Below are positions 9,401 through 32,800 of a stretch of 64,000 bases of DNA, one piece after another. Each line of letters opens with the position of its first letter. Position 1 is the first letter of the stretch. The translations under genes and the position numbers were made by a program. The DNA comes from Phyllobates terribilis. Its lineage: Eukaryota. Location of the stretch: contig NW_027362768.1 of NCBI RefSeq assembly GCF_046119375.1, positions 367,598,001 to 367,662,000 of the forward strand, read 5' to 3'. Below the pieces are notes generated by a model that saw only the letters and a program-made list of their open reading frames with translations, did no database searches and was not told where the DNA came from.

Positions 9401-12400
9401 AGACTTTACTGGCCGAGTCTGATTCACTGATTAGAATAGGACTCGCTCTGAGTCTCAAGGATCGGAAATGTGGATCCCTTGTTAAAACTGATGTGTGTGT
9501 ATGGATCAGTGACTTTCTCTGGGTCAATGTCCTGCCTGTTTAAAAAATGGATGTGTGAATGCAGCCTAAAGTTTAGTTAAGAAGATGCAGAGAGGCATTT
9601 GTGCACCCTTAGCTCTGCAGGCGACGGGCTGGTAACTTCCAGCAATCAGGTTGATGTTCACTGATGTCATTTGCCGGTGTGGGGCGACGTTGTGCGATGT
9701 CACGGCTCATCATCTCCTCGCTTTATGTCCAGGTGAGAGCTGGGATGAAATTATTAACTCTCTGACCTCGGCTGCAATCAAGTTTGAGTTAATGGCAACT
9801 CCCCATCGCTCCCAGGTAATATAGTCCCAGAAAGCATATATATATATATATATATAATTATATCTAGTGCTAGTGGAGATCCTGCTCTGCCTCTTATTCT
9901 GCTGCTGTCAGGACGTCCTCGGAGTCGTCCCCGTGGAGCCACAGGTTTGAAACGGGAGGGAAAAGAGAAGATGGAGCAGGATCAGACTACACAGGGTTTG
10001 TTTGTAGTCTGTATCTATGGAGACACACAGATCTGAATAGGAGCTGTATGCACAAAATAATACGACATTTTTAATCAAGACTATTTGCAAAGTTGCTTAG
10101 TTTTTTTTATTTTAGATGCAACGGGGAAATACTAAAAGGGGTGGCGAAAGTGTTTATACCTTTTATGAAAAGAGAGCAGGGGTTGGTCTTCATTATGAGG
10201 TCTGTATTACATTTCAGCAAAAAATGGTGACCACTGCTACATACAGTGGTGCGTCCATGGCGGCGGTGTATGGGGACATTCTTACCCATGAGCCCTCACT
10301 ATATTCATGCTTTGGGGTGACCAAAGTGAACAGTGGGACAAGCTGGAAAAAAAACTAATTCCAGTCTGATATATGATCCAATCTGCAGTCATAAATTACA
10401 ATAGCACATTTTTTTTTATACTTTTCCATTAAGGTGAACCTGAACTTGGGGGAGACCAACATCACAACCAAGGGAACGAAAAGTGGCGCATTTGTGATGT
10501 ATAACTGCGCCCGACTGGCCACCATGTTTGACAGCTATAAAGGCGCTGTCAGTCAAGGTACTATATCCGTCAGCTACTTTTGGGCTGCAGACTGTGTTCT
10601 GGTTATAAGAGATATATTCTTCTTTTCTCAGGCACCTATCCAGAGTTCCCACCGGCCGGAGATCTCAACTACTCCAGTCTACGTGAAGAGGTGAGAGAGC
10701 CCTGCTCCATGTCCCATCACAGTAATGAGAGTGGCGCCCCCTGGTGTTTATTATTTATCTGACAAACCATTTATAGGGACCAGAAGTTGTGAAGCAAAGA
10801 TCATGTTCTGTTTTGGACGGTTGCCTGTTAGGGCTTGAACACAACTTCTGTTTCATCACACAGGGAGAATGGCTCCTTCTCTTTAATTATATCATGATGT
10901 TCCCAGAGGTGCTCAGCCAGTCGGCACAGATGTCAGCGACCTCCCCCGGGATCCGGGTCACGGCCAACACCGAGGCGGTAAGATGTCTCCTGGGCTGGTT
11001 TACTATGTAAGGGAAAGAGACCAGGACACTGACAAGTGCATAGAGATGTAGTAGAGCTGAATTTGTCATGAATCTGGCTTTGCTATATCTGTGTCCTATA
11101 TGACTTTCACAAAAGAATTTCAAACTTCTTCTTTAATGCAACTTTAGATTTAAAGCTTTAGTGGTCAGGCTTCCGTTATTGGTGCTCCTGCAAGGGGCGG
11201 GCATAGCTACAAAGTCATCAAGGCGAGGAGTGTTCACACTTACCATGGAGCCCCCACTGACAGGTCACTTGGATGCAGGACCAGATACCTGAGCAGCGGG
11301 AGGCAAGTGGAGGGCACCAGGCAGTGACTACACATGATAAATGTAATGCCCACCAATGGTACCCGCACCTGTCACCAGAACTTGAGGCCCCCCGCAGTCA
11401 CCAGGGATTCAGGCTGAGGATGAGGAAAATGTGGCTGCAATGCTTTCCTTTTACTGCTATAACAAATATGGTAAACAGTCAAGCATGACTAAAAGTTTAT
11501 TCCCCAAAATTGCAAGTTATCCCCGATATGTACAATAGGGGATTAATTACTGATCGCTGCGGACTCTGACCTGTGGGACCCCTGAACAGGGCGGTGGATC
11601 CTAGATCAGAGGTGCATATGGTCAGCTAGGACTACTGGGAAAAGCAGAGCTGCTTTTTTTTGGAAGTCGCATAGATCAGGGTCCCCAACTCCAGTCCTCA
11701 AGGCCCACCAACAGGTCATGTTTTCAGGATTTCCTTAGTATTGCTCAGGGGATAATTGCATCACTTGTGTACTAGTAAGGAAATCCTGAAAACATGACCT
11801 GTTGGTGGGCCTTGAGGACTGGAGTTGGGGAACCCTGCCATAGATGATGAACAGAGCGGAGGTCGAGAATGCGCCACCTTCACTCCGTGCAGAACTGGGA
11901 TCTGCAAAGTCTGGTTCCTGGGATTTATATCCCTGTTCTTGTAACCTTTGGAGGTCCCTGAGGTTGGAACCCCAGTGACTGGTAAATTATCCCCAAATCC
12001 ATAGAATAGGGGGTTACCTTACTATTTTGGGAATAACCCTTTAATTACATGTTTCAGTAACTTCCATAGAAGTGAATGGAGAGAGCTGCATATGTACAGT
12101 CACCTCCTAAGGGCTCATGCAGATGTTATTTGGTCCGAGCACAGACTGACTGTAGGTCTCCCGACCCGTGCGTGACAGCCTCACAGGCATATATCAGGAG
12201 ATCTGCAAACAGTCCATGCTCGGACAGTCGCATCATCAGGGCGTGATGGAAATTATATTATTGCAATAGCCACTAAGCCCCGAATCGGCGCTGACTACAT
12301 CAGAGCATCTCTACAGCTGCAGAACATCCCACTTGTCAGGGCCGATGTATTATACATTGACTATTGGTTTTATTTCAGGTGTGTAAATTCCTTGTCAGCC

Positions 12401-12653
12401 TCAGCATGGATTTCAGCTGTTACTACAACAGGGTGCACATATTAGGGGTGAGTGATATCACACAGCTTTATCTACAGATTGTGAGTTTTTGTTAGTTTGC
12501 AATGAAATAAAACACGTTCCATGCCTTTTGCAGGAGCCGCTGCCTCATCTCTTCAGTCAGATGTTTGCTCGCCTGCAGCTGATGAAAGCCGTTCAGAGCG
12601 TGCTGCATTCTGCATTAAAGACGCTTCATATTTTACCATTGACTCAGATATAG
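2976..12653 (+). CDS. DALRD3: DALR anticodon-binding domain-containing protein 3, 13 coding exons, 541 aa
   Basis: Exons 2976-3164, 5476-5780, 5882-6147, 6517-6569, 6655-6768, 7693-7763, 9098-9156, 9733-9815, 10434-10557, 10632-10690, 10864-10977, 12379-12447 and 12534-12653. All introns are GT-AG, phases are consistent and the total is 1626 nt. Motifs [52 protein letters not shown] and [17 protein letters not shown] match DALRD3 as recalled. Confidence 0.95.
3445..5395. repeat. 38 bp minisatellite in DALRD3 intron 1, about 50 units, with internal inverted blocks
   Basis: Unit CATCTAAGCCTATCCTATATGATACC(A/G)CTGCGCC(A/C)GTG. Reverse-complement units occur at about 4285-4312 and about 4690-4822. 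Confidence 0.95.
8075..8358. mobile_element. hAT-type palindromic MITE
   Basis: Termini TAGTGATGA...TCATCACTA, a perfect 8 bp TSD CTCAACAA (8067-8074 and 8359-8366), and arms complementary almost to the centre. Confidence 0.9.
8370..8945 (-). mobile_element. Degenerate Tc1 transposase fragment
   Basis: Minus-strand peptides [17 protein letters not shown]...[12 protein letters not shown] and [10 protein letters not shown] resemble Tc1 transposase segments, with frameshifts. Confidence 0.75.
9187..9566. mobile_element. PIF/Harbinger-type MITE
   Basis: TIR GGCTGCATTCACACAT...ATGTGTGAATGCAGCC, with TAA on both sides (9184-9186 and 9567-9569). Confidence 0.85.
11491..12044. mobile_element. Old TTAA-type (T2/Kolobok-like) MITE interrupted by a hAT MITE
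   Basis: Left end TTATTCCCCAAAAT is the inverse of right end ATTTTGGGAATAACCCTTTAA. Confidence 0.55.
11677..11837. mobile_element. hAT (Charlie-like) palindromic MITE
   Basis: Termini CAGGGTCCCCAACTCCAGTCCTCAAGGCCC...GGGCCTTGAGGACTGGAGTTGGGGAACCCTG, with 8 bp flanks GCATAGAT and CCATAGAT (7/8 identical). Confidence 0.9.
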
Positions 12654-13096: not shown

Positions 13097-13244
13097 GTGT
13101 TTTTATTTAAGAAAGATGTGGCTTTACTTTACTTGTGTAGCAGATAAATGTTCTGCATTTATGGGGTATACATCATACAGTATAGGGGACTATTAACCGC
13201 TAAAGAATAAGAATCTAAAGTTATTCAATAGTTTAACTGCTATA

Positions 13245-14692
13245 ATGCTGCCCCCTATGTACAATAATTACTATAATACTGCCCCCTATGTACAAGAATA
13301 TAACTACTGTAATACTGCCCCTATGTACAAGAATATAACTACTATAATACTGCCCCTATGTACAAGAATATAACTACTATAATACTGCCCCCTATGTACA
13401 AGAATATAACTACTATAATACAGCCCCTATGTACAAGAATATAACTACTATAATACTGCCCCCTATGTACAAGAATATAACTACTATAATACTGCCCCCT
13501 ATGTACAAGAATATAACTACTATAATACAGCCCCTATGTACAAGAATATAACTACTATAATACTGCCCCCTATGTACAAGAATATAACTACTATAATACT
13601 GCCCCCTATGTACAAGAATATAACTACTATAATACTGCTCCTATGTACAAGAATATAACTACTATAATACTGCTCCTATGTACAAGAATATAACTACTAT
13701 AATACTGCTCCTATGTACAAGAATATAACTACTATAATACTGCTCCTATGTCCAAGAATATAACTACTATAATACTGCCCCTATGTACAAGAATATAACT
13801 ACTATAATACTGCCCCCTATGTACAAGAATATAACTACTATAATACTGCTCCTATGTACAAGAATATAACTACTATAATACTGCCCCTATGTACAAGAAT
13901 ATACTATAATACTGCCCCTATGTACAAGAATATAACTACTATAATACTGCTCCTATGTACAAGAATATTACTACTATAATACTGCTCCTATGTACAAGAA
14001 TATAACTACTATAATACTGCCCCCTATGTACAAGAATATAACTACTATAATACTGTCTCGTATGCACAAGAATATAACTACCATAATACTGCCTCTAGGT
14101 ACAAGAATATAACTACTATAATACTGCCCCTATGTACAAGAATATAACTACTATAATACTGCCCCTATGTACAAGAATATAACTACTATAATACTGCTCC
14201 TATGTACAAGAATATAACTACTATAATACTGCCCCCTATGTACAAGAGTATAACTACTATAATACTGCTCCTATGTACAAGAATATAACTACTATAATAC
14301 TGCTCCTATGTACAAGAATATAACTACTATAATACTGCCCCTATATACAAGAATATAACTACTATAATACTGCCCCTATATACAAGAATATAACTACTAT
14401 AATACTGCCCCTATGTACAAGAATATAACTACTATAATACTGCTCCTATGTACAAGAATATAACTACTATAATACTGCCCCTATGTACAAGAATATAACT
14501 ACTATAATACTGCCCCTATATACAAGAATATAACTACTATAATACTGCCCCTATGTACAAGAATATAACTACTATAATACTGCTCCTATGTACAAGAATA
14601 TAACTACTATAATACTGCCCCCTATGTACAAGAATATAACTACTATAATACTGCCCCCTATGTACAAGAATATAACTGCTATAATGCTGCCC
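13245..14692. repeat. 35/36 bp minisatellite, array 1, about 40 units
   Basis: Unit AATACTG(CCCCC/CCCC/CTCC)TATGTACAAGAATATAACTACTAT. Confidence 0.97.
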
Positions 14693-14752
14693 CATTAAAT
14701 GAAATGAAATTGTGCATGAATTCATGGCAGGACACTCCTTTATAGCCGCAGT

Positions 14753-17700
14753 TTATTGCAGTTGTCTCATTACCATATACACATATTTCTGACGCTGGAT
14801 CCAGTGTTGGGGACCCTGATGTTGAGGTAACTCAAAGAATGAAAAGCTGAAGTTGCGGCTGAAGTTGAGCTCGGTCACTGCAGGGACTGGAGGTAATTTC
14901 ATATTATGGAATTTATTGAAGGACCGTCTCTTGGTCACTCCGTTTCGGCCCCTGAGCTTAGCTCTGTCATTACCCTTGTCTTTGGATGGCGGCTGTTCAC
15001 AGGGACTTGCCTTCGGGCTCCAGTTGTCCTTGTTGGCAGACTCTCTCTGACTTTGCGGGTAGTCAGCCATGTTGTCAGGGCACGTCTTTGGAGATGGGAT
15101 GCTGTGAAGGAGACACGTCAGCGAGGTCTCTGAAGGAGATGCCCTGACCCATGGGGTCATATCACTGGCAAGGATGGGCTGAGGCTTCTGCTTCCCCCTG
15201 GTTGGTGATGCCTTCAGAGCGGGGATGAGGTTTGTATTCTTGCCAGTATCTCGGATACTTACAGCTGGAGGATACAGTAATATTAGGTCTAAGAACAAGA
15301 AATAACATTCAGATTTGCATGTCTATATCCTCCATTATTATACAAGATCCCATAATGGTTGGACACTGTCCTGTGGTGCACAGCAGAGGACTTAGGGGCC
15401 AAAGACCATCATGGCAGCTGCAATGAGTCTGAGCATCTGACCTCAACCCAATACACAAGAGGATCAACCCATAAGGTCTCTTTATCTTTCTCTGCTTTTG
15501 CGTTCCTGTCTACAGCTATAACAGACAAGCATTTAGTTTTGGACAGGCAAACCAGTTGATAACGGCACGAGCAATGTGTGCAGGGAAGGGAGGGGCAAGG
15601 AATTTACAGCACCCATGGTGCTGGCAGAATGCTGATGAAAAGGAACTGCCCACTTTAAAAAGTAACCTGCAAGTTACAGAGCATGAGGATAGTTACTGGA
15701 CATATTAGACTGGTGTGTTCACCAAAAAAAAAGTTTTTACTTGTGGGGGGATAAAGGCAGCGAGACCATGCTGAACTATAGAATCACTGAAGGTAGCAAC
15801 CTTAATGAGTGAAAAAAGCGTGTTCAAACATTCAGGATTTTTTTGGGATTTCTGCAAAGTTTCCCCTAATGAGAGGGGGGTGATTTAATAATCAAAGATA
15901 GATACCTAAATGTAATGGAGGTAAATGGCAACAGGACAAAGAGACATTTCTTTATACACTCCTCAACTTCAAAAACGCAAAACCAAGAAGGAAAAGTTGT
16001 GGCATTATGGAAGTGACAAGATGGATTGACAGGTTACTGATCTGCAAGTGACAAGAAAGCGTCTGGTGCTGAAATCCCGGCACTTGAAGCCTCGGCTGCT
16101 GTCAGTGAGGTCATTAATGATGGACCGAGGGATGTTCTGCTGCGCTGAATGCACTTAGACAAATCATCAATATCTGTGTAAATGCCGTCTGATGATTTGG
16201 GTAGAGACTGTATGAAGCCTTAGTCTTGGTATGTGATATCTAATTTCATTGGCAATAAAGAAAGGATCAATTGTGGAACCAGTGGTGCGGCCATTTCTCC
16301 AGTGTCCGAGGAGCTGATTCTCGATACAACCCCAGGCCACACATGGCTCGTGCCACTGTGAGCAGTCTGCGTGGCCTGAATGTGCTCCCATGGCGGCAGT
16401 GTCTCCGGACTTGTCTCCTATCGAGCACATCTGGGACGTCATTGGTTGGCAATTGTAAAGGGAGCTGCCAGCAGCGGATTTTGATGATTCCACAGTGTTT
16501 CCTTCTTGGTGTTGCAATTGCAATGTTGAGGACTGTAATTAGGATAGTCCATCAATATGAGATTAGTGAGAGCCCGACACCCTCACTGATCAGCTTTCAC
16601 CAGGTCTCGCTGCAGACTGAAATACACAGACCTGGAGCAGCACAGCGCCATACATTATGTAGTGCTCGTTCTCAGGTGCTGCAGTTTAGATCACATTCAC
16701 TTCAATAGGAAGTGAGCTGCAGTACCTGAGAACGGCCACTACACGGTGTATGTCGGTCTGCTGTTCTGGCTCTATACACCTATTCTATGGATAGGCCATC
16801 AATATGAACGTCCTAGACATCCCCTTTAATAACAAGGTAAAAACTATATTTCTAGCTCCATGGTTCATTTCCATTCGTATTCCTAGACCTGAAAAAATGT
16901 ACTGTTGTCACTGTAAAACAAAATATAATTGTCGGAAATGGGGTTATTTTAGGTAGTATTGTGAGAAAAAAATGTTTTTTTCTACCCGTCACTATTAATA
17001 AGTAACTTACCGTGTATACTCGAGTATAAGAAGAGTTTTTCAGCACATTTTTTGGTGGATAGTGGGGGGGGTGGGGGGGCACACGCAGTAGCGGCTGCTG
17101 CAGCTACCATGTGTACCCGCTGCTAAAGGGAAATAAATATTCTCTCTTCTCCACGTCCATGGGCGTGGAGAAGAGGACATACTCATTCTCTTTAGTATCG
17201 GGCACGGAGGAGCGCAGAGCCACGGCTCCTGCTGTCAGTGCTTGCTGCTAAAGAGAATGCATATTCACTCCTCTCCACGCCCATAGTCCTGGCATGGAGA
17301 GGAGTGAATACGCCGGCAGCAGCTCACATCAGTGTCTATGACGCCATGCGCTCTCAGATGCTGACTTGAGCTGCAGCAGGAGAACAGGACGCAGCGCTGA
17401 AGCAGAGGTGAGGAAGGAAGGTGAGTATAAATGTGTGCAGTGATGGGGCCATACATACCAGGATTGGGGGGGGATGAGGGGTGCCATGCATACCACGATT
17501 GGGGGGGGGGGTGAGGGGTGCCATGCATGCCAGGATTGGGGGGGGGGGGTGAGGGGTGCCATGCATGCCAGGATTGGGGGGGGGGGGGGAGGGGTGCCAT
17601 GCATACTAGGATTGGGGGATGAAGGGGCCATGCATACCAGGATTGGGGGTTAGTGGGCAATACTTACCAGGATGGGGAAATTTACCAGTAGCTGCTGCAT

Positions 17701-20700
17701 TTCCCACCCTAGGCTTATACTCGAGTCAATATGTTTTCCCAGTAAAATTAGGTACCATACATACCAGGATTGGGGGATGAGGTGTGCCATACATACCAGG
17801 ATTGGGGGGGGGGGGTGAGGGGTGCCATGCATGCCAGGATTGGGGGGGGTGAGGGGTGCCATGCATACCAGGATTGGGGGGGATGAGGGGTGCCATGCAT
17901 ACCAGGATTGGGGGGGATGAGGGGTGCCATGCATACCAGGATTGGGGGGGATGAGGGGTGCCATGCATACCAGGATTGGGGGGGGGGGATGAGGGGTGCC
18001 AAGCATACCAGGATTGGGAAGGATGAGAGGTGCCATGTATACCAGGATTGGATGGATGAAGGGGCCATGCATACCAGGATTGTGTGGATGAGGGGTGCCA
18101 TGCATACCAGGATTGGGGGATGAGGGGGCCATGCATACCAGGATTGGGGAGATGAGGGGTGCCATGTATACCAGAATTGGGGGGATGAGGGGTGCCATGC
18201 ATACCAGGATTGGGTGGATGAGGGGTGCCATGCATACCAGGATTGGGGGTTAGTAGGCAATACTTACCAGGATGGGGAAATTTACCAGCAGCCGCTGCAT
18301 TTCCCACCCTAGGCTTATACTCGAGTCAATAAGTTTTCCCAGTAAAATTAGGTACCATACATACCAGGATTGGGGGATGAGGGGTGCCATGCATACCAGG
18401 ATTGGGGGATGAACAGGCCATGCATACCAGGATTGGGGGATGAGGGGTGCCATGCATACCAGGATTGGGGGATGAGGGGTGCCATGCATACCAGGATTGG
18501 GGAATGGGAGGTGCCATGCATACCAGGATTGGGGAATGGGAGGTGCCATGCTTACCAGGATTGGGGGATGAGGGGTGCCATGCATACCAGGATTGGGGGA
18601 TGAGGGGTGCCATGCATGCCAGGATTGGGGGATGAGGGGTGCCATGCATGCCAGGATTGGGGGATGAGGGAGCCATGCATACCAGGATTGGGGATGAGGG
18701 GGCCATGCATACCAGGATTGTGGGTTAGTGGGCAATACTTACCAGGATGGGGAAATTTACCAGTAGCCGCTGCATTTCCCACCCTAAGCTTATACTCGAG
18801 TCAATAAGTTTTCCCAGTAAAATTAGGTACCATACATACTAGGATTGGGGGATGAGGGGTGCCATGCATACCAGGATTGGGGGATGAAGGGGCCATGCAT
18901 ACCAGGATTGGGGGATGAGGGGTGCCATGCATACCAGGATTGGGGGATGAGGGGTGCCATGCATACCAGGATTGGGGAATGGGAGGTGCCATGCATACCA
19001 GGATTGGGGGATGAGGGGTGCCAGGCATACCAGGATTGGGGGATGAGGGGTGCCAGGCATACCAGGATTGGGGGATGAGGGGTGCCATGCATGCCAGGAT
19101 TGGGGGATGAGGGGGCCATGCATACCAGGATTGGAGATGAAGGAGCCATGCATACCAGGATTGGGGATGAGGGGGCCATGAATACCAGGATTGGGTGTTA
19201 GTGGGCAATACTTACCAGGATGGGGGAATTTACCAGTAGCCGCTGCATTTCCCACCCTAGGCTTATACTCGAGTCAATAAGTTTTCCCAGTAAAATTAGG
19301 TACCTCGGCTTATACTCTGGTCGGCTTATACTCGAGTATATACAGTATATTTTCTAGTTCATGCTTTGCTTCTATTTGTATTTTATTAATTTCCTGTTCT
19401 TAGAATACAAAATTCTATCAGATACCGGACACTGGTATCTGATAGCAGCGAGGTGATTAGTGAAGTCTCCGCTATTACGACCGGTGATATAAGAGAGCAG
19501 GTGGCTAAACGTGGATTCGAGGTGTGTAAATTAGACTATAAGCCAGGCATCAGGCGTAGACACCTTTCATGTATTTTCAGTAGATTCCCCTATAATGAGT
19601 GGCAGCGTGATTACCGCCCCCTGACATATAATATGTAAACTATTGCACCGAGGGGCGAGGCTGACACCTACCTTAACGTGCCAAGTGCAGTGGAAGCCAG
19701 GCTTTGTACTGGACTCTCCCCTTTCATTACCTGAACTAGTCATTTATGGCCATTGGCAAGTGCCAGTGATTTTCTTACGTGGCAGATGGAAGATCACAGC
19801 TGGCGGGGCCTGGCACACCCCAATGAGGGCACAATTGTGGTCGGAGCCAGACAAACCTTTGAGAGTGGCGTAAAGTCACGCTTGGCTGGATACATTTCCA
19901 TGCCCCCAACAGCTGCATTTAATAGCCCAACATCTCCCCACGGTAGCGTGTCATAGTCAAAGATGCCCGCCCTACCCATATGCCACCTGCACAGCACGTA
20001 CCTGTGACCTTTCCTGCTCCTTTCTTAATTAACGGCAAAGCAGATACTTTTCCTCTGTCAGCCACGAGTTCATTTAATGCAATGTCCGGGCTTCTGGCAT
20101 CGGTGGGTATCTGGGATAGAAAATAAGACGATGAGTGTGACTCAGTCCATGTAACTTATCACAATCCATTGCAACTTCTTAAAGGTGATGTCTCGTCTTA
20201 TTTAATGGGTAGGTTTGCAAAGCTCTTTAGGTTACTGCTCATTACCTAGGTTACCGGTCACCGCTGAAGTTCATCAGAGGTGGCCGGTTTTCTAGGCAAG
20301 GTGCGTGCTCTTGCAAGTTGTTTGCTATATATATATAGTTAAGAAACACAACTTTGAAGCTGGATAGATGGCTGGATCCTGCCAGCGTCAGTGCTCAGCA
20401 CTACCCCCATGCTGCAGAGGTAAGGCTGCCTCTGTTAGCACAGTTTGGACTAGCGGCTCAGCCAAGCCACTGCTCCGAACTGTCAATCATCAGGAGATCA
20501 CTGCCCGTTGGCAAGCAAGAGTCCAGGCAGCAGGGTAAAGGTGCATTCACGAAAATAGGATCCTGAGACAACCCTGTAAAAGACTATGCACCCCAAATAT
20601 TAGGGAAATCTGGGTCGGACCAACTTGGGTAATGATAAGCGCGCCACCCATATTGGTCATCACCCAGGATTACCTTCAATAAAAAGAAATAGGAAACAGC

Positions 20701-21026
20701 ATGATAGTAGAGGGCAACTCCACCATCACCCTTCTCTCCTCCAATATTTGCAGACGACCACCAATCAAGCTTAATATAAAATTACACATGCAAAATTGAT
20801 CTACCTTCTGTCGGGAATTCTCCTGCCGAGTTCTTCTGTTGTTCTTCCAGTCACTCTGGCTTCTTGGAGACAAAGCTGGAGAATGTTCTGTCTTTAGGCA
20901 AAGTCTGGGGGTCAACGGTGCCACACGTGTACCACCTGCAGCCTCCTGACCAGGCACCAGAACAGTCACCCTCTTAGAGTTCCCTCTATCTGACCTCCGT
21001 TTCTTGGATACATTATTCTGGTGCAT
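14753..21026 (-). CDS. Candidate unannotated three-exon gene, about 271 aa; 5' end uncertain
   Basis: Proposed exons 21026-20805 (donor AAG|GTAGAT, phase 0), 20673-20592 (pyrimidine-rich acceptor, donor G|GTGCAT, phase 1) and 15264-14753 (acceptor TATCCTCCAG, 170 codons including the stop, which lies inside AATAAA). Phases chain without a stop. No homolog recognised. Confidence 0.4.
15957..16535 (-). mobile_element. Internally deleted Tc1 element with an internal inversion
   Basis: TA-flanked imperfect TIRs (CACTCCTCAAC...CCAAGAAGGAAA) at both ends. The segment RPHMARATV...VSPDLSPIEHIWD is on + (about 16270-16480), while the C-terminal VHSAQQNIPRSIINDLTDS is on - (16170-16050). Confidence 0.8.
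16540..16830. mobile_element. TTAA-type (T2/Kolobok-like) MITE relic
   Basis: Ends in CTAGACATCCCCTTTAA and has the central CATTCACTTCAATAGG...GAGCTGCAGTACC pattern. Confidence 0.5.
17010..19345. mobile_element. Non-autonomous Tc1/mariner-superfamily (Tc2/pogo-like) element with internal tandem amplification
   Basis: TA|CCGTGTATACTCGAGTATAAG at 17010-17030 and CTTATACTCGAGTATATACAG|TA at 19325-19345, with 2 mismatches between the TIRs. Four internal blocks each contain a G-rich array plus a roughly 108 bp subterminal segment. Confidence 0.85.
17451..19195. repeat. G-rich minisatellite of about 31-38 bp in four blocks
   Basis: Unit GGGGTGCCATGCATACCAGGATTGGGGG(n)ATGA with variable G-run length. 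Confidence 0.95.
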
Positions 21027-21497
21027 TGCAGAAGGTGGATTCTGGTCTGTTTTGGTCTTCAGAAGACCCAAGCAAACGGTTCAGCATTTTGGGGTCATTG
21101 CTTAGAAAAGTTTGTCCAATGTTCTGCATGGACAACTATCCAAGTGTCACTGGTGAACCATGGAGGTTTCTGCTGAGGGCTCGTATCAACAGAAATTAAT
21201 TATTCATTAAGTCTCTTGGGTTGGGAGTAGATTAGCCTTTCATGGGTGGCAAATACTCAATAATTCAGGCTGGCATTGACAATGCACATTTGTATCCATT
21301 ATAAAAGCTGTAAAGAGAGCAACAGCCAGTGAATGGGAACCAGAAGATCAGATTCAGATCCACATACACAGAGAAGCTCAGGGACTTCCTACTATAAAGG
21401 TCATGTACCTGTTTGCATGAAATCTCCAGAATATAGAATGTGGAAAGTACTATAGAATTCCGATAATCCAGAAATTTCTTTAGTACCAATGGCAGCA

Positions 21498-24400
21498 CTA
21501 TGTACAAGAATATAACGGTCATAATACTGCCCCCTATGTACAAGAATATAACGGTCATAATACTGCCCCCTATGTACAAGAATATAATGGTCATAATACT
21601 GCTCCTATGTACAAGAATATAACTACTATAATACTGCCCCCTATGTACAAGAATATAACTACTATAATACTGCTCCTATGTACAAGAATATAACTACTAT
21701 AATACTGCCCCCTATGTACAAGAATATAACTACTATAATACTGCTCCAATGTACAAGAATATAACTGCCATAATACTGCCCCCTATGTACAAGAATATAA
21801 CGGTCATAATACTGCTCCTATGTACAAGAATATAACTACTATAATACTGCCCCCTATGTACAAGAATATAACTACTATAATACTGCTCCTATGTACAAGA
21901 ATATAACTACTATAATACGGCTCCTATGTACAAGAATATAACTACTATAATACTGCTCCTATGTACAAGAATATAACTACTATAATACGGCTCCTATGTA
22001 CAAGAATATAACTACTATAATACTGCCCCCTATGTACAAGAATATAACAACTATAATACTGCTCCTATGTACAAGAATATAACTACTATAATACTGCTCC
22101 CTATGTACAAGAATATAACTACTATAATACTGCTCCCTATGTACAAGAATATAACTACTATAATACTGCTCCCTATGTACAAGAATATAACTATTATAAT
22201 ACTGCTCCCTATGTACAAGAATATAACTACTATAATACTGCTCCTATGTACAAGAATATAACTACAATAATACTGCTCCTATGTACAAGAATATAACTAC
22301 TATAATACTGCTCCTATGTACAAGAATATAACTACTACAATACTGCTCCTATGTACAAGAATATAACTACTACAATACTGCCCCCTATGTACAAGAATAT
22401 AACTACTACAATACTGCTCCTATGTACAAGAATATAACTACTACAATACTGCTCCTATGTACAAGAATATAACTACTATAATACTGCTCCTATGTACAAG
22501 AATATAACTACTATAATACTGCTCCTATGTACAAGAATATAACTACTATAATACTGCTCCTATGTACAAGAATATAACTACTATAATACTGCTCCCTATG
22601 TACAAGAATATAACTACTATAATACTGCTCCCTATGTACAAGAATATAACTACTATAATACTGCTCCCTATGTACAAGAATATAACTACTATAATACTGC
22701 TCCCTATGTACAAGAATATAACTACTATAATACTGCTCCCTATGTACAAGAATATAACTACTATAATACTGCTCCTATGTACAAGAATATAACTACAATA
22801 ATACTGCTCCTATGTATAAGAATATAACTACTACAATACTGCTCCTATGTACAAGAATATAACTACTACAATACTGCTCCTATGTACAAGAATATAACTA
22901 CTATAATACTGCCCCCTATGTACAAGAATATAACTACTATAATACTGCTCCGTATGTACAAGAATATAACTACTATAATACTGCTCCCTATGTACAAGAA
23001 TATAACTACTATAATACTGCTCCTATGTACAAGAATATAACTACTATAATACTGCTCCTATGTACAAAAATATAACTACTATAATACTGCTCCCTATGTA
23101 CAAGAATATAACTACTATAATACTGCTCCGTATGTACAAGAATATAACTACTATAATACTGCTCCCTATGTACAAGAATATAACTACTATAATACTGCTC
23201 CTATGTATAAGAATATAACTACTATAATACTGCTCCCTATGTACAAGAATAAAACTACTATAATACTGCTCCTATGTACAAGAATATAACTACTATAATA
23301 CTGCTCCTATGTACAAGAATATAACTACTATAATACTGCCCCCTATGTACAAGAATATAACTACTATAATACTGCTCCCTATGTACAAGAATATAACTAC
23401 TATAATACTGCTCCTATGTACAAGAATATAACTACTATAATACTGCTCCCCCTATGTACAAGAATATAACTACTATAATACTGCTCCTATGTACAAGAAT
23501 ATAACTACTATAATACTGCTCCTATGTACAAGAATATAACTACTATAATACTGCTCCTATGTACAAGAATATAACTACTATAATACTGCTCCCTATGTAC
23601 AAGAATATAACTACTATAATACTGCTCCTATGTATAAGAATATAACTACTATAATACTGCTCCTATGTACAAGAATATAACTACTATAATACGGCTCCTA
23701 TGTACAAGAATATAACTACTATAATACTGCCCCCTATGTACAAGAATATAACAACTATAATACTGCTCCTATGTACAAGAATATAACTACTATAATACTG
23801 CTCCCTATGTACAAGAATATAACTACTATAATACTGCTCCCTATGTACAAGAATATAACTACTATAATACTGCTCCCTATGTACAAGAATATAACTATTA
23901 TAATACTGCTCCCTATGTACAAGAATATAACTACTATAATACTGCTCCTATGTACAAGAATATAACTACAATAATACTGCTCCTATGTACAAGAATATAA
24001 CTACTACAATACTGCTCCTATGTACAAGAATATAACTACTACAATACTGCCCCCTATGTACAAGAATATAACTACTACAATACTGCTCCTATGTACAAGA
24101 ATATAACTACTACAATACTGCTCCTATGTACAAGAATATAACTACTATAATACTGCTCCTATGTACAAGAATATAACTACTATAATACTGCTCCTATGTA
24201 CAAGAATATAACTACTATAATACTGCTCCTATGTACAAGAATATAACTACTATAATACTGCTCCTATGTACAAGAATATAACTACTATAATACTGCTCCC
24301 TATGTACAAGAATATAACTACTATAATACTGCTCCCTATGTACAAGAATATAACTACTATAATACTGCTCCCTATGTACAAGAATATAACTACTATAATA

Positions 24401-27400
24401 CTGCTCCCTATGTACAAGAATATAACTACTATAATACTGCTCCCTATGTACAAGAATATAACTACTATAATACTGCTCCTATGTACAAGAATATAACTAC
24501 AATAATACTGCTCCTATGTATAAGAATATAACTACTACAATACTGCTCCTATGTACAAAAATATAACTACTACAATACTGCTCCTATGTACAAGAATATA
24601 ACTACTACAATACTGCTCCTATGTACAAGAATATAACTACTATAATACTGCCCCCTATGTACAAGAATATAACTACTATAATACTGCTCCGTATGTACAA
24701 GAATATAACTACTATAATACTGCTCCCTATGTACAAGAATATAACTACTATAATACTGCTCCTATGTACAAGAATATAACTACTATAATACTGCTCCTAT
24801 GTACAAAAATATAACTACTATAATACTGCTCCCTATGTACAAGAATATAACTACTATAATACTGCTCCGTATGTACAAGAATATAACTACTATAATACTG
24901 CTCCCTATGTACAAGAATATAACTACTATAATACTGCTCCTATGTATAAGAATATAACTACTATAATACTGCTCCCTATGTACAAGAATATAACTACTAT
25001 AATACTGCTCCTATGTACAAGAATATAACTACTATAATACTGCCCCCTATGTACAAGAATATAACTACTATAATACTGCTCCCTATGTACAAGAATATAA
25101 CTACTATAATACTGCTCCTATGTACAAGAATATAACTACTATAATACTGCTCCCCCTATGTACAAGAATATAACTACTATAATACTGCTCCTATGTACAA
25201 GAATATAACTACTATAATACTGCTCCTATGTACAAGAATATAACTACTATAATACTGCTCCTATGTACAAGAATATAACTACTATAATACTGCTCCCTAT
25301 GTACAAGAATATAACTACTATAATACTGCTCCTATGTATAAGAATATAACTACTATAATACTGCTCCCTATGTACAAGAATATAACTACTATAATACTGC
25401 TCCCTATGTACAAGAATATAACTACTATAATACTGCTCCCTATGTACAAGAATATAACTACTATAATACTGCTCCCTATGTACAAGAATATAACTACTAT
25501 AATACTGCTCCTATGTACAAGAATATAACTACTATAATACTGCTCCTATGTACAAGAATATAACTGCTATAATGTATATTGTACTGCTCCCCCTATGTAC
25601 AAGAATATAACTACTATAATACTGCTCCTATGTATAAGAATATAACTACTATAATACTGCTCCCTATGTACAAGAATATAACTACTATAATACTGCTCCT
25701 ATGTACAAGAATATAACTACTATAATACTGCCCCCTATGTACAAGAATATAACTACTATAATACTGCTCCCTATGTACAAGAATATAACTACTATAATAC
25801 TGCTCCTATGTACAAGAATATAACTACTATAATACTGCTCCCTATGTACAAGAATATAACTACTATAATACTGCTCCATATGTACAAGAATATAACTACT
25901 ATAATACTGCTCCTATGTATAAGAATATAACTACTATAATACTGCTCCTATGTACAAGAATATAACTACTATAATACTGCTCCCTATGTACAAGAATATA
26001 ACTACTATAATACTGCTCCCTATGTACAAGAATATAACTACTATAATACTGCTCCCTATGTACAAGAATATAACTACTATAATACTGCTCCCTATGTACA
26101 AGAATATAACTATTATAATACTGCTCCCTATGTACAAGAATATAACTACTATAATACTGCTCCCTATGTACAAGAATATAACTACTATAATACTGCTCCC
26201 TATGTACAAGAATATAACTACTATAATACTGCTCCCTATGTACAAGAATATAACTACTATAATACTGCTCCTATGTACAAGAATATAACTACTATAATAC
26301 TGCTCCTATGTACAAGAATATAACTGCTATAATGTATATTGTACTGCTCCCCCTATGTACAAGAATATAACTACTATAATACTGCTCCTATGTATAAGAA
26401 TATAACTACTATAATACTGCTCCCTATGTACAAGAATATAACTACTATAATACTGCTCCTATGTACAAGAATATAACTACTATAATACTGCCCCCTATGT
26501 ACAAGAATATAACTACTATAATACTGCTCCCTATGTACAAGAATATAACTACTATAATACTGCTCCCTATGTACAAGAATATAACTACTATAATACTGCT
26601 CCTATGTACAAGAATATAACTATAATACTGCTCCTATGTACAAGAATATAACTACTATAATACTGCTCCTATGTACAAGAATATAACTGCTATAATGTAT
26701 ATTGTACTGCTCCCCCTATGTACAAGAATATAACTACTATAATACTGCTCCTATGTATAAGAATATAACTACTATAATACTGCTCCCTATGTACAAGAAT
26801 ATAACTACTATAATACTGCTCCTATGTACAAGAATATAACTACTATAATACTGCCCCCTATGTACAAGAATATAACTACTATAATACTGCTCCCTATGTA
26901 CAAGAATATAACTACTATAATACTGCTCCCTATGTACAAGAATATAACTACTATAATACTGCTGCTATGTACAAGAATATAACTATAATACTGCTCCTAT
27001 GTACAAGAATATAACTACTATAATACTGCTCGCTATGTACAAGAATATAACTACTATAATACTGCTCCCTATGTACAAGAATATAACTACTATAATACTG
27101 CTCCCTATGTACAAGAATATAACTACTATAATACTGCTCCTATGTACAAGAATATAACTACTATAATACTGCTCCCTATGTACAAGAATATAACTACTAT
27201 AATACTGCTCCCTATGTACAAGAATATAACTACTATAATACTGCCCCCTATGTACAAGAATATAACTACTATAATACTGCTCCTATGTACAAGAATATAA
27301 CTACTATAATACTGCTCCTATGTACAAGAATATAACTGCTATAATGTATATTGTACTGCTCCCCCTATGTACAAGAATATAACTACTATAATACTGCTCC

Positions 27401-29429
27401 TATGTATAAGAATATAACTACTATAATACTGCTCCCTATGTACAAGAATATAACTACTATAATACTGCTCCTATGTACAAGAATATAACTACTATAATAC
27501 TGCCCCCTATGTACAAGAATATAACTACTATAATACTGCTCCCTATGTACAAGAATATAACTACTATAATACTGCTCCCTATGTACAAGAATATAACTAC
27601 TATAATACTGCTCCTATGTACAAGAATATAACTATAATACTGCTCCTATGTACAAGAATATAACTACTATAATACTGCTCCTATGTACAAGAATATAACT
27701 GCTATAATGTATATTGTACTGCTCCCCCTATGTACAAGAATATAACTACTATAATACTGCTCCTATGTATAAGAATATAACTACTATAATACTGCTCCCT
27801 ATGTACAAGAATATAACTACTATAATACTGCTCCTATGTACAAGAATATAACTACTATAATACTGCCCCCTATGTACAAGAATATAACTACTATAATACT
27901 GCTCCCTATGTACAAGAATATAACTACTATAATACTGCTCCCTATGTACAAGAATATAACTACTATAATACTGCTGCTATGTACAAGAATATAACTATAA
28001 TACTGCTCCTATGTACAAGAATATAACTACTATAATACTGCTCGCTATGTACAAGAATATAACTACTATAATACTGCTCCCTATGTACAAGAATATAACT
28101 ACTATAATACTGCTCCCTATGTACAAGAATATAACTACTATAATACTGCTCCTATGTACAAGAATATAACTACTATAATACTGCTCCCTATGTACAAGAA
28201 TATAACTACTATAATACTGCTCCCTATGTACAAGAATATAACTACTATAATACTGCTCCCTATGTACAAGAATATAACTACTATAATACTGCTCCCTATG
28301 TACAAGAATATAACTACTATAATACTGCTCCCTATGTACAAGAATATAACTACTATAATACTGCTCCCTATGTACAAGAATATAACTACTATAATACTGC
28401 TCCTATGTACAAGAATATAACTACTATAATACTGCTCCTATGTACAAGAATATAACTACTATAATACTGCTCCTATGTACAAGAATATAACTACTATAAT
28501 ACTGCTCCTATGTATAAGAATATAACTACTATAATACTGCTCCCTATGTACAAGAATATAACTACTATAATACTGCTCCTATGTACAAGAATATAACTAC
28601 TATAATACTGCCCCCTATGTACAAGAATATAACTACTATAATACTGCTCCCTATGTACAAGAATATAACTACTATAATACTGCCCCCTATGTACAAGAAT
28701 ATAACTACTATAATACTGCTCCTATGTACAAGAATATAACTACTATAATACTGCTCGCTATGTACAAGAATATAACTACTATAATACTGCTCGCTATGTA
28801 CAAGAATATAACTACTATAATACTGCTCCCTATGTACAAGAATATAACTACTATAATACTGCTCCCTATGTACAAGAATATAACTACTATAATACTGCTC
28901 CTATGTACAAGAATATAACTACTATAATACTGCTCCCTATGTACAAGAATATAACTACTATAATACTGCTCCCTATGTACAAGAATATAACTACTATAAT
29001 ACTGCTCCCTATGTACAAGAATATAACTACTATAATACTGCTCCCTATGTACAAGAATATAACTACTATAATACTGCTCCCTATGTACAAGAATATAACT
29101 ACTATAATACTGCTCCCTATGTACAAGAATATAACTACTATAATACTGCTCCCTATGTACAAGAATATAACTACTATAATACTGCTCCCTATGTACAAGA
29201 ATATAACTACTATAATACTGCTCCCTATGTACAAGAATATAACTACTATAATACTGCTCCCTATGTACAAGAATATAACTACTATAATACTGCTCCCTAT
29301 GTACAAGAATATAACTACTATAATACTGCTCCCTATGTACAAGAATATAACTACTATAATACTGCTCCCTATATACAGGAATATAACTACTATAATACTG
29401 CTCCTATGTATAAGAATATAACTACTATA
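21498..29429. repeat. 35/36 bp minisatellite, array 2, about 220 units, with higher-order duplications
   Basis: Same unit and orientation as array 1. Marker variants recur at 1704 bp and 1012 bp offsets, and a degenerate remnant lies at about 29590-29635. Confidence 0.97.
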
Positions 29430-29814: not shown

Positions 29815-32800
29815 CTAGTGTTCACACTTCACAATCTCCAGGCCTTGCCCGCAGAGCACATACAGATGCCTTTCATCACGTGTCCAGCAGTCTAGTCCTG
29901 ACACGTCGGCCACGTGACAGAATTTGGTGGCCACGTGTTTAAGATCACTGTCCCCAATATTCCAAAGAGTCAGACGCTGATCCACAGACACCGATACCAG
30001 GAGGTCATCTCGGAGGAGGCGCAGTCCGGTGACATGTGCAGCATGAGCAGAAGTGGCAGAGACTGACCGGAGAAGTTGTGCACCTGGTCCTCTGGGACCT
30101 TTGTCATCCAACAATAACCAACACACACAGATAGAATTGTCATCTCCTCCGCTGGCGACCAGATATTGTCCATCCTTAGTCCTCTGGACGCAGAGACTGT
30201 TGATCCCACATTGGTGAGCGGAGAACAAAAAGCAAACAGATCCCAAATCTGGAAACAGAGGTTCTTGTAAGTTTTCATTATTAGTTACCCCAAATTGATT
30301 GTATACCCCAGGCAAATTGTACACACCGAGTTCTACCAAGTGCCGTTTTCTCCACCCCAAGCGCTGGCTCCAAGTATAAAGTTTTGTCTAGTGTCTTCCT
30401 TTAACTATTTAACGTCTCTGTTGACGTTCCATAGGGCTGTCGTATGTAGCCGAGCGCTGCACTCGGGTATCTTGCAGCCTTATAAGCATTGCACAGAATG
30501 GCGGTGCTACAGCCCTTTACTAATGAGGCATTTCAGACCCTTGTTCTCCGGATCGGTGGGCGTCCCAATCACCCAGTTGTATTTTTTAAGAGCATCATTT
30601 TAGGGGGGGGGGGGTAGATATAATATATTCAATATTTTTTTTAGTGGGATGTGCAATTAATAAAAAGGCAATTTCACTACTGACTTTACAGCTTTATTTT
30701 GTGGGTTCTTAGAATTATGGTGAGATCAATATTTTTTTTTCCATGTTTCTCTACAAAAACTTTTTAGATTATTTGTCCAATTTATTTTGCTACATAAAAC
30801 TTTTTCATTTTTATTCTTTTTTTTGGTGAGGTGGAGCTAAACAAATAACAGCACTTTCTAAAAAAAATAAAATAATAATAAAAAATAAAAAAATCATTTA
30901 CCATGCGGAATAATGTTTATTTTATCATGCCGTACTTTCCTGATGCAGAGAGGATTTTTGTTTCTTTTTATATTGTCCCAGTCGCTGACGTGAACATGCA
31001 ATCCTCGGATTGCTTCTGTAATATATTGTGATACTTTTGTATTGCGGTATGTTATTATACCTGGCAGTGTCACACCTCGATCTGCTAAACGACCCTACAA
31101 TCCCTACTGAAAGTGCCATCTAAGGAATTAACCAGCCAGGAGGTTGGATGCACAGAATCCCCCTTACATTAGCCATATGTTGTTTATGTATCATGGATCA
31201 AATGATCTCTGGGGAAATCACTCAGCACTTAATAAATGTATAATGAGCCTGTTTAATGCATGCTAGTACTCAGGCGCTGTCTCTACCTCCCCTATGAGAA
31301 CGAGTGTGCACTAGAATGACTACTGTAGACCGGCGCCGTACAACCTGCCATCCTCAGAAAAGAAGGCAACCCCCTGCCAAAAGACACTAACAGCCCTCCT
31401 TACTGTCTACTATTCTATGAAGATCTAAATTATGACCTAATGGTTATGAGAAGGCTAATATTAGCCTGAGTTACTGCAATTTCCATAGTAAAATGGCAAC
31501 CACCATGCTTTAGACTGCAGCCTGCATTCTGGAAACAAGTGCAGGATACCTAATGTTTCACAGTGACGTCTACTGTTAATTTATAACTTATGCTTTTATA
31601 TATCGTTTTCTACAACCCCTTTTAAGCTATGGACACCTTTGACATGGCAAAAAAATGAGTTTTACTTATGTACGTATTTACCTTTTGGTAATGAAATGAC
31701 ATTACACGTAGGTTTGCAATCTTCATTTCTTCATTCATTCTCAGGCCCCCTGATATGCAGTTTGTAGCTTGATCCAAGTTTCAGATTTTTATCTTGTGGG
31801 AATGTCTCTCCCAGTAATATAGGCTGTATGTGAGGTCTGTGTCTCTCCCAGTAACATAGGCTGTATGTGAGGTCTGTTTCTCTCCCAGTAACATAGGCTG
31901 TATGTGAGGTCTGTTTCTCTCCCAGTAATATAGATTGGATGTGAGGTCTGTGTCTCTCCCAGTAATATAGATTGGATGTGAGGTCTGTGTGTCTCTCCCA
32001 GTAATATAGGCTGTATGTCAGGTCTGTGTCTCTCCCAGTAATATAGATTGGATGTGAGGTCTGTGTCTCTCCCAGTAATATAGATTGGATGTGAGGTCTG
32101 TGTCTCTCCCAGTAATATAGATTGGATGTGAGGTCTGTGTGTCTCTCCCAGTAATATAGGCTGTATGTGAGGTCTGTTTCTCTCCCAGTAATATAGATTG
32201 GATGTGAGGTCTGTGTCTCTCCTAGTAATATAGATTGGATGTGAGGTCTGTGTCTCTCCCAGTAATATAGATTGGATGTGAGGTCTGTGTGTCTCTCTCA
32301 GTAATATAGGCTGTATGTCAGGTCTGTGTCTCTCTCAGTAATATAGATTGGATGTGAGGTCTGTGTGTCTCCCCTAGTAATATAGGCTGTATGTGAGGTC
32401 TGTGCGTCTCCCCTAGTAATATAGGCTGTATGTGAGGTCTGTGTGTCTCTCCCAGTAATATAGGCAGTATGTGAGGTCTGTGTCTCTCTCAGTAATATAG
32501 ATTGGATGTGAGGTCTGTGTCTCTCCCAGTAATATAGGCAGTATGTGAGGTCTGTGTCTCTCCCAGTAATATAGATTGGATGTGAGGTCTGTGTGTCTCT
32601 CCCAGTAATATAGGCAGTATGTGAGGTCTGTGTGTCTCTCCTAGTAATATAGGCTGTATGTGAGGTCTGTGTCTCTCTCAGTAATATAGATTGGATGTGA
32701 TGTCTGTGTCTCTCCCAGTAATATAGGCTGTATGTGAGGTCTGTGTCTCTCTCAGTAATATAGATTGGATGTGATGTCTGTGTGTCTCCCCTAGTAATAT

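What the first reader, a model, noticed from the sequence alone, without database searches (positions are those of the whole stretch)
14753..21026. Candidate unannotated gene hidden between DALRD3 and WDR6
Seen: three minus-strand segments chain in phase (222+82+512 nt, 271 aa). They read MHQNNVSKKRR...NSRQK | VILGDDQYGWRAYHYPSWSDPDFPNIW | AVSIRDTGK...LPPVPAVTELNFSRNFSFSFFELPQHQGPQHWIQRQKYVYMVMRQLQ*. The last segment is the longest ORF in the window not explained by a repeat, a transposon or the three named genes, and its stop lies inside AATAAA. Known: in human, DALRD3 and WDR6 are adjacent tail-to-tail with no coding gene between them. Inference: a lineage-restricted gene with two aromatic motifs in a basic, S/P-rich disordered protein. 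The start codon, the GTGCAT donor and possible extra exons (for example acceptor 15515) are uncertain.
Basis: partly seen in the sequence, partly recalled or inferred. Interest (0 to 1): 0.72.

Follow-up and report, generated by a model that had tools for sequence, protein, structure and literature searches.

The report
Old unnamed vertebrate gene beside WDR6

Summary
A real protein-coding gene lies on the minus strand between DALRD3 and WDR6. The middle segment (20592-20673) is intronic. The true exon 2 is 20002-20110, which gives 222+109+512 nt and 280 aa.

Evidence for the gene:
- The exon lengths are identical to the annotated Dendrobates tinctorius ortholog.
- dN/dS against that ortholog is 0.18.
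- A ranid RNA-derived contig carries the whole ORF without introns.
- The order WDR6, then this gene, then DALRD3 on the opposite strand, holds in Ascaphus and in a catshark.

The gene is not lineage-restricted. An exhaustive profile search finds relatives in shark, coelacanth, lungfish, paddlefish, gar, about 100 teleosts including zebrafish, a salamander, frogs and lizards. All are labelled "uncharacterized" or carry names driven by composition. None is from a mammal, bird, turtle or crocodilian. There is no Pfam family, solved structure or paper.

The protein is basic (pI 10.65) and predicted to be disordered apart from a C-terminal helix. It has three conserved islands. The strongest is LPP....L.F.R.F.FSFFELP, which is invariant from shark to frog.

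Function is untested. My best inference is a short-motif docking or adaptor protein.

The parts
20805..21026 (-). Coding exon 1 (222 nt, 74 codons, ATG at 21026-21024; a phase-0 intron follows).
   Evidence: Reads MHQNNVSKKRR...NSRQK, with donor AAG|GTAGAT. It is 84% identical over 74 aa to D. tinctorius exon 1 and matches Ascaphus at E 7e-8. An in-frame TGA lies 19 codons upstream of the ATG (read directly).
20002..20110 (-). True coding exon 2 (109 nt). It encodes IPTDARSPDIALNELVADRGKVSALPLIKKGAGKVT, including the conserved LPLIKK island, and is followed by a phase-1 intron.
   Evidence: Acceptor tctatcccag|ATA and donor ACAG|gtacgt. It is 83% identical to D. tinctorius exon 2 and matches Ascaphus at E 2e-5. 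Its length equals that of the D. tinctorius exon 10913-11021.
14753..15264 (-). Coding exon 3 (512 nt including the TAA stop). It carries the MTPWV..SPSETS island, the TKRRS basic cluster, the invariant LPPVP....L.FSRNFSFSFFELP motif and the C-terminal helix.
   Evidence: for the sequence. 16 frog orthologs at E 1e-101 to 6e-32. dN/dS 0.11 against D. tinctorius. AlphaFold2 predicts a helix at exon-3 residues 151-168 with pLDDT about 90 and no other regular structure.
14752..14757 (-). AATAAA overlapping the stop codon. It is a possible poly(A) signal, but its use is unproven.
   Evidence: Read directly. The ranid cDNA contig has the same CAATAAA but runs about 220 nt further, so the signal is not necessarily used.
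21244..21321 (-). Conserved non-coding element 220-300 nt upstream of the ATG. It contains a TATA-like TTTTATAA and is a candidate for the gene's own promoter (inference).
   Evidence: 78% identity over 78 nt with Ascaphus truei, at the equivalent place upstream of its ortholog.
20592..20673 (-). It is intron 1 sequence, not coding.
   Evidence: In D. tinctorius it has an in-frame TAA, a 1-bp deletion and a lost donor GT. There is no Ascaphus match, and the segment is absent from every annotated ortholog.
17440..19304 (.). G-rich 32-bp minisatellite (475-bp higher-order unit) inside intron 2. It accounts for the long proline-rich repeat ORFs here.
   Evidence: Tandem Repeats Finder and the ORF list. 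It has no counterpart in the D. tinctorius intron, which is 2.6 kb against 4.7 kb here.
13234..14693 (.). 35-bp AT-rich satellite array that starts 60 nt after the stop codon, between this gene and DALRD3.
   Evidence: The same satellite sits at the same place in D. tinctorius.
21498..29429 (.). 7.9-kb array of the same 35-bp satellite, in the same orientation, between the 3' end of WDR6 (about 29.8 kb) and exon 1.
   Evidence: A 1.9-kb array occupies the same place in D. tinctorius.

Best explanation
Shown: this is the poison-frog ortholog of an old, single-copy, unnamed vertebrate gene, exemplified by Xenopus tropicalis LOC100485975. The gene has three coding exons (20805-21026, 20002-20110, 14753-15264, minus strand) that encode a 280-aa, 31-kDa, very basic protein (pI 10.65). 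It sits just downstream of WDR6 on the same strand and tail-to-tail with DALRD3, and a catshark has the same arrangement. It is under purifying selection, and an ortholog is transcribed and spliced in a ranid frog. Inferred: the protein is intrinsically disordered and acts through short linear motifs. Basic clusters (KKRR at 8-11, TKRRS at 221-225) probably take it to the nucleus or to nucleic acid. Three conserved islands probably dock onto folded partner proteins: LPLIKK at 99-104, MTPWV..SPSETS at 146-158, and the C-terminal module at 234-280. In that module an aromatic stretch, F.R.F.FSFFELP, would fold on binding, most likely as a strand with one all-phenylalanine face, and a basic amphipathic helix follows it. 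The serine- and threonine-rich context suggests control by phosphorylation. The partner is unknown.
For: Gene model:
- The exons join into one 843-nt ORF with a single terminal stop.
- Exon lengths 222/109/512 are identical to D. tinctorius.

Orthologs:
- 16 frog proteins of 142-295 aa match exon 3.
- An exhaustive HMMER profile search gives 41 cluster representatives. Those looked up are from Scyliorhinus, Latimeria, Protopterus, Polyodon, Lepisosteus, Anguilla, other teleosts, Pleurodeles, Xenopus and four lizard genera.
- The word search gives 121 hits, including Danio rerio.

Selection: dN/dS is 0.18 overall and 0.11 for exon 3, at dS 0.26.

Transcription: the 1193-bp Logan contig from SRR13833756 carries the full ranid ORF without introns and has in-frame stops upstream of the ATG.

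Synteny: Ascaphus, D. tinctorius and Scyliorhinus all have WDR6, then the gene, then DALRD3 on the opposite strand. In zebrafish the gene also follows WDR6. In the window, WD40 exons lie at 29818-30360 and 41688-43988 on the minus strand, and a DALR_1 C-terminal match lies at 12489-12650 on the plus strand.

Disorder: two AlphaFold2 runs, with mean pLDDT 59 and 47, give only the C-terminal helix.

Conservation: the invariant columns across 34 sequences from shark to frog are PW and LPP/L.F/F.FSFFELP.
Against: No experiment or paper addresses function. There is no Pfam family, no solved relative and no usable atlas hit, so the docking mechanism rests only on conservation pattern and predicted disorder. 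No RNA data from this species were available, so splicing here is inferred from orthologs and splice signals. The homodimer test of the C-terminal module gave no verdict. Low AlphaFold confidence is not proof of disorder.
Confidence: 0.85

Rival explanations
1. One reading: a 271-aa, frog-restricted protein that uses 20592-20673 as its middle exon.
For: The segment has a usable acceptor and a GTGCAT donor and keeps the reading phase. It is 82 nt and the true exon is 109 nt, so both leave one extra base.
Against: No ortholog contains this segment. In D. tinctorius it carries a stop codon, a frameshift and a lost donor. Ascaphus has no match. Using both middle exons together would shift the frame. 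The family is vertebrate-wide.
Confidence: 0.03
2. The exons are not an independent gene but alternative 3' exons, or a read-through product, of WDR6, which lies upstream on the same strand in every species examined.
For: Same-strand adjacency to WDR6 holds from shark to frog and in zebrafish. One eel prediction fuses a WDR6 C-terminal part to this protein (P0038).
Against: NCBI models in many species keep it as a separate gene with its own ATG. The ranid transcript contig has in-frame stops upstream of the ATG and no WD40 sequence. An in-frame TGA lies 19 codons upstream of the ATG in the window. A conserved TATA-like element lies upstream of exon 1. A 7.9-kb satellite separates the gene from WDR6 here. 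The eel fusion still contains the internal start Met of the fish protein, which fits a gene-prediction merge.
Confidence: 0.05
3. Mechanistic variant A: the invariant S-F-F-E-L-P is an ATG8/LC3-interacting (LIR/AIM) motif, and the protein is a phospho-regulated adaptor or substrate of selective autophagy.
For: The core FFEL fits the LIR consensus [W/F/Y]-x-x-[L/I/V]. It has serine or threonine residues just upstream and a proline after it, and it sits in a disordered region. From my memory, not tested here, this resembles the SWVELP LIR of NIX/BNIP3L.
Against: The LIR consensus is short and matches many sequences by chance. The invariance extends over about 25 residues (L.F.R.F.F before the core), which is far more than an LIR needs. 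No binding test was possible.
Confidence: 0.1
4. Mechanistic variant B: the protein is a functional partner or regulator of its neighbour WDR6, which from established knowledge is the FTSJ1 cofactor for tRNA position-34 2'-O-methylation. On this view the shared function has preserved the linkage.
For: The tandem order WDR6 then this gene is kept in catshark, zebrafish and frogs. The protein is very basic, so it could bind RNA. An aromatic strand-forming motif could add onto a beta-propeller edge (inference).
Against: Adjacency alone is weak evidence for binding. WDR6 works in mammals, where I found no member of this family. No interaction test was run, because the pair exceeds the size limit and adjacency alone did not justify one.
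Confidence: 0.08
5. The ORFs are chance, repeat-derived or a decaying pseudogene.
For: The locus is surrounded by satellites, and the intron holds a minisatellite that gives long spurious ORFs.
Against: The exons lie outside the repeat arrays. Syntenic orthologs with intact ORFs occur across jawed vertebrates. dN/dS is 0.18. A spliced transcript exists in a ranid.
Confidence: 0.01

Closest known systems
Predicted 'uncharacterized protein' orthologs, e.g. Dendrobates tinctorius P0001 (280 aa), Xenopus tropicalis LOC100485975, Anolis carolinensis LOC103277983, Danio rerio XP_017213077, Scyliorhinus torazame XP_072329121
   Same: Same three conserved islands, same C-terminal invariant motif and helix, and same position downstream of WDR6. 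Exon 3 is 93% identical to D. tinctorius, with the same three coding-exon lengths.
   Different: Nothing essential differs, so this is an ortholog. Teleost members are shorter (about 200 aa) and have a poly-proline tract where frogs have a serine- and proline-rich linker. Lizard members diverge in the middle. None has a studied function.
Formin-like, WIPF/WASP-like, AF4/FMR2 and 'C15orf39 homolog' labels given to fish members by automatic naming
   Same: Only proline-rich, low-complexity composition.
   Different: None of 34 family members matches any Pfam domain (no FH2, WH2 or other). The labels disagree among near-identical sequences, so they are artefacts of composition.
LIR/AIM-containing autophagy adaptors such as NIX/BNIP3L (resemblance recalled from memory)
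   Same: A Ser-aromatic-x-Glu-Leu-Pro core in a disordered, serine-rich context.
   Different: There is no sequence homology outside six residues, no transmembrane or BH3 element, and the conserved stretch is much longer. Binding is untested.

Membership tests
Unnamed gnathostome family (LOC100485975-like) | C-terminal LPP-x4-L-x-F-x-R-x-F-x-FSFFELP motif followed by a basic amphipathic helix at the extreme C-terminus | tested here: met
   Window residues 234-280. These columns are invariant in the 34-sequence alignment, and the helix is predicted with pLDDT about 90.
Unnamed gnathostome family (LOC100485975-like) | Central (M/I)(T/A/S)PW-x3-S-x-S(E/D)(S/T)S island and upstream LPLI island | tested here: met
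   MTPWVRASPSETS at 146-158 and LPLIKK at 99-104.
Unnamed gnathostome family (LOC100485975-like) | Significant whole-protein sequence similarity | tested here: met
   Exon 3 against frog orthologs gives E 1e-101 to 6e-32. The frog profile reaches lizards at 1e-29, coelacanth at 8e-24, shark at 8e-13 and teleosts down to 1e-5.
Unnamed gnathostome family (LOC100485975-like) | Genomic position immediately downstream of WDR6 on the same strand | tested here: met
   Window: WD40 exons on the minus strand at 29.8-44 kb and collinearity with D. tinctorius. The same order holds in Ascaphus, catshark and zebrafish.
Unnamed gnathostome family (LOC100485975-like) | Coding-exon structure with one large terminal exon that starts after the LPLI island | tested here: met
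   Exon lengths are identical to D. tinctorius. Ascaphus has its exon 2/3 boundary at the same residue, and the zebrafish last exon covers residues 54-205.
Formin / WASP-interacting proteins (names attached to fish members) | FH2, WH2 or other diagnostic domain | tested here: not met
   No Pfam hit for the window exons or for any of 34 members.
LIR/AIM-motif ATG8 binders | Core [W/F/Y]-x-x-[L/I/V] in a disordered region with acidic or phosphorylatable residues upstream | tested here: met
   S-FFEL-P at 251-257 in a low-confidence, coil-predicted region. The pattern is weak and common.
LIR/AIM-motif ATG8 binders | Physical binding to LC3/GABARAP | not testable with these tools
This needs a bench assay.
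WDR6 (as alternative terminal exons) | Continuous reading frame or splice junctions from WDR6 exons | tested here: inconclusive
   In-frame stops lie upstream of the ATG in the window and in the ranid cDNA, and annotators keep the genes apart. No RNA data exist for this species, and one eel model fuses them.
Repeat or transposon-derived ORF | Multiple copies, or overlap with repeat arrays or transposon domains | tested here: not met
   The exons lie outside the arrays found by Tandem Repeats Finder. There is no Pfam transposon domain. One syntenic copy was found in each species examined.

The most novel reading that the evidence does not exclude
An ancient orphan protein is held next to WDR6 from shark to frog and, as far as annotation shows, lost in mammals and birds. 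It carries a roughly 25-residue aromatic motif that has not changed from shark to frog. It could be an unrecognised regulator with one fixed partner, for example a phospho-switched ATG8-binding adaptor or a cofactor of the WDR6/FTSJ1 tRNA-methylation machinery. Its absence from mammals and birds would explain why it has never been studied.
Probability: 0.12. Interest if true: 0.65.

Novelty: new member of a known kind. Interest (0 to 1): 0.4.

Why it matters
For this genome, the result gives a corrected gene model (280 aa, three exons) at a place where human-based expectation says there is no gene. More broadly, it flags a vertebrate-wide protein family with no name, no Pfam entry, no structure and no literature. 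Its core motif is frozen from sharks to frogs, and it appears to be missing from mammals and birds. Such genes are easy to overlook because they have no human ortholog. Zebrafish and Xenopus both carry this one, so its function is directly testable. It is not a surprising discovery in itself, because automatic pipelines already predict it in many genomes.

Tried and rejected
- Pfam on the three reader segments and on 34 family members: nothing, apart from a sub-threshold Ig_PVRIG match to exon 1 (E 0.099), which I dismissed.
- Profile search of solved structures at E up to 10: no hit.
- ESM Atlas feature search with the Ascaphus ortholog: no usable hit.
- Homodimer prediction for the C-terminal 58 residues: no verdict, score 0.00, controls not run. 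This is no evidence either way.
- Structure searches with the AlphaFold models: not run, because confidence outside one helix was too low to give meaningful matches.
- Literature searches for LOC100485975, for FSFFELP, for WDR6 + DALRD3 + synteny, and for the SRA run id: no papers.
- Synteny look-ups for the two lizard isoforms: not on record, so the amniote position is unverified.
- A PP2A-B56 LxxIxE reading of FFELPE: rejected, because the final Glu is not conserved.
- A FFAT-motif reading of SFFELPE: considered unlikely, because Leu sits where, from memory, FFAT motifs have Ala.
- The joined 280-aa model was not sent to any search, fold or family tool. Those used exon-wise references or database orthologs. 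The join was made only inside scripts, to check frame and length and to compute dN/dS and composition.
- No contig was taken for human, and no human sequence was consulted.
Full report
**Observation**

- Segment 1 (20805-21026) starts at an ATG and ends at AAG|GTAGAT.
- Segment 2 (20592-20673) follows a pyrimidine tract plus AG and ends at GG|GTGCAT.
- Segment 3 (14753-15264) follows tcctccag| and ends in a TAA stop that lies inside AATAAA (14757-14752).

The arithmetic 222+82+512 is in phase. No Pfam family matches any segment.

**What the gene really is**

A word search with exon 3 alone returned 16 frog proteins, with E values from 1e-101 to 6e-32. Most are 268-295 aa long and all are annotated as uncharacterized. 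The closest are dendrobatoid frogs:
- Dendrobates tinctorius, 93% identity
- Anomaloglossus, 91%
- Ranitomeya, 89%

The most distant are Ascaphus, Discoglossus and Rhinophrynus, at 51-53%. So the window comes from a poison-frog relative.

The orthologs begin like segment 1 and end like segment 3. The matching window exon is 20002-20110, with acceptor tctatcccag|ATA and donor ACAG|gtacgt. That explains why the false chain looked consistent.

Joined in a script only, the exons give 843 nt and 280 aa with one terminal stop. The D. tinctorius gene has exactly the same coding-exon lengths, 222/109/512.

- In D. tinctorius it has an in-frame TAA at the seventh codon, a 1-bp deletion and no GT at the donor.
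- In Ascaphus nothing matches it, whereas the true exon 2 matches both species.

**Evidence that the gene is functional**
- Against D. tinctorius, dS is 0.26 and dN/dS is 0.18. Exon 3 alone gives 0.11.
- A 1193-bp contig assembled from the public run SRR13833756 carries the complete ORF of a ranid ortholog with no introns. It has in-frame stops upstream of the ATG, so it is a spliced mRNA with its own start.
- About 220-300 nt upstream of the window ATG lies a 78-nt block that is 78% identical to the equivalent place in Ascaphus. It contains TTTTATAA. I take this as a candidate promoter, which is an inference.
- An in-frame TGA lies 19 codons upstream of the ATG.

**Surroundings**
- WD40-repeat exons of WDR6 lie on the minus strand at 29818-30360 and 41688-43988.
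- The window is collinear with the D. tinctorius WDR6 and DALRD3 flanks.
- A DALR_1 C-terminal match lies on the plus strand at 12489-12650.

The same 35-bp AT-rich satellite brackets the gene. One array runs from 13234 to 14693, starting 60 nt after the stop codon. The other runs from 21498 to 29429, which is 7.9 kb. D. tinctorius has the same two arrays. Intron 2 holds a G-rich 32-bp minisatellite (17440-19304) that D. tinctorius lacks. This minisatellite produces the long proline-rich pseudo-ORFs in the ORF list.

**Not lineage-restricted**

A profile of 14 frog sequences, searched against 1.84 billion cluster representatives, gave 41 hits at E up to 1e-3. Look-ups named them as follows:
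- Scyliorhinus torazame (catshark)
- Latimeria (coelacanth)
- Protopterus (lungfish)
- Polyodon (paddlefish)
- Lepisosteus (gar)
- Anguilla and other teleosts
- Pleurodeles (salamander)
- Xenopus tropicalis LOC100485975
- the lizards Podarcis, Pogona, Anolis and Hemicordylus

A second word search with a 34-sequence alignment listed 121 members, including Danio rerio. Among the look-ups, one teleost cluster member also carries a Mustela putorius furo label, which I take for a mislabelled or contaminant record. Otherwise none is from a mammal, bird, turtle or crocodilian. That is an absence among predicted proteins, not proof of absence from those genomes.

Fish members carry contradictory names (formin-like, WIPF3, AF4/FMR2, C15orf39 homolog). 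These names vary among near-identical sequences, and no Pfam domain supports them. They reflect a poly-proline tract.

The arrangement WDR6, then the gene, then DALRD3 on the opposite strand, is found in Ascaphus, D. tinctorius and the catshark. In zebrafish the gene again follows WDR6. So this microsynteny goes back to the common ancestor of jawed vertebrates. One eel model fuses a WDR6 C-terminal part to this protein. The internal start methionine is still there, so I read that as a merged gene prediction.

**The protein**

It is 280 aa and 31 kDa, with pI 10.65. It has 49 Lys+Arg against 21 Asp+Glu, and a quarter of its residues are Ser, Thr or Pro. AlphaFold2 was run on exon 3 with a 34-sequence alignment and on the full-length D. 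tinctorius ortholog. Both runs give low confidence and no regular structure except one helix over the last 18 residues.

Conservation is concentrated in three islands:
- LPLI(K/R)(K/R), at 99-104
- (M/I)(T/A/S)PW...S.SE(S/T)S, at 146-158, where PW is invariant
- the C-terminal module, at 234-280

In the C-terminal module, L-P-P, L, F, F, F-S-F-F-E-L-P are identical in all 34 sequences from shark to frog. Basic clusters lie at 8-11 and 221-225.

**How it most likely works**

The gene, its conservation, its predicted disorder and its motif layout are shown. The rest is inferred. A disordered, basic protein with a few frozen short motifs is the signature of a docking or adaptor protein whose motifs fold on a partner. 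The pattern of alternating phenylalanines suggests a strand with one aromatic face, followed by an amphipathic helix. The many neighbouring serines and threonines suggest control by phosphorylation.

Two specific readings remain open and are scored as rivals.
- The core S-FFEL-P fits the LC3-interaction consensus. From memory, it resembles the NIX motif SWVELP.
- The fixed linkage to WDR6 could reflect a shared function.

Neither reading could be tested here.

**Comparison with what is known**

The gene is an ortholog of database-predicted but uncharacterized proteins. It has no Pfam family, no solved relative, no atlas neighbour and no paper that I could find. The scan's own index had no note on this gene. 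One note from another piece of the same genome calls it a poison frog, which agrees with the closest orthologs found here.

**Verdict**

Interest is moderate. The value lies in the corrected model and in flagging an old, unnamed vertebrate family that zebrafish and Xenopus make testable.

Noticed in passing
window 13234-14693 and 21498-29429; L002 7632-9523 and 14163-15923: The same 35-bp AT-rich satellite, in the same orientation, brackets the gene on both sides in this frog and in Dendrobates tinctorius. The upstream array is 7.9 kb here against 1.9 kb there. The downstream array starts only about 60 nt after the stop codon, so the 3' UTR is either very short or runs into satellite.
   Followed up: partly
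window 17440-19304: A G-rich 32-bp minisatellite with a 475-bp higher-order unit lies in intron 2. It is absent from the D. tinctorius intron and gives open reading frames of up to 193 aa on both strands (PPILVCMAP... on the minus strand), which could be mistaken for a proline-rich gene.
   Followed up: partly
window 21244-21321 (minus strand): A 78-nt non-coding block is 78% identical between this frog and Ascaphus truei. It lies upstream of the gene's ATG and contains a TATA-like TTTTATAA, so it is a candidate core promoter.
   Followed up: partly
window 221-2602 (plus strand): A 793-aa ORF has a strong reverse-transcriptase match (RVT_1, E 2e-36). This is a retroelement copy at the edge of the window, in a region of strong GC skew.
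   Followed up: partly
window 50866-54366 (minus strand): Three overlapping ORFs of 1078-1166 aa are open in all three minus-strand frames over about 3.4 kb of GC-rich sequence (54%). The longest has no Pfam match. It is probably a repeat array, but I did not examine it.
   Followed up: no
P0038 (Anguilla anguilla, 673 aa) and P0036 (Pleuronectes platessa, 318 aa): Two gene predictions fuse this family's protein to a neighbour: to a WDR6 C-terminal part in the eel, and to an SLC26-type transporter N-terminus in the plaice. They are likely annotation merges, and they happen to record the fish gene order.
   Followed up: partly
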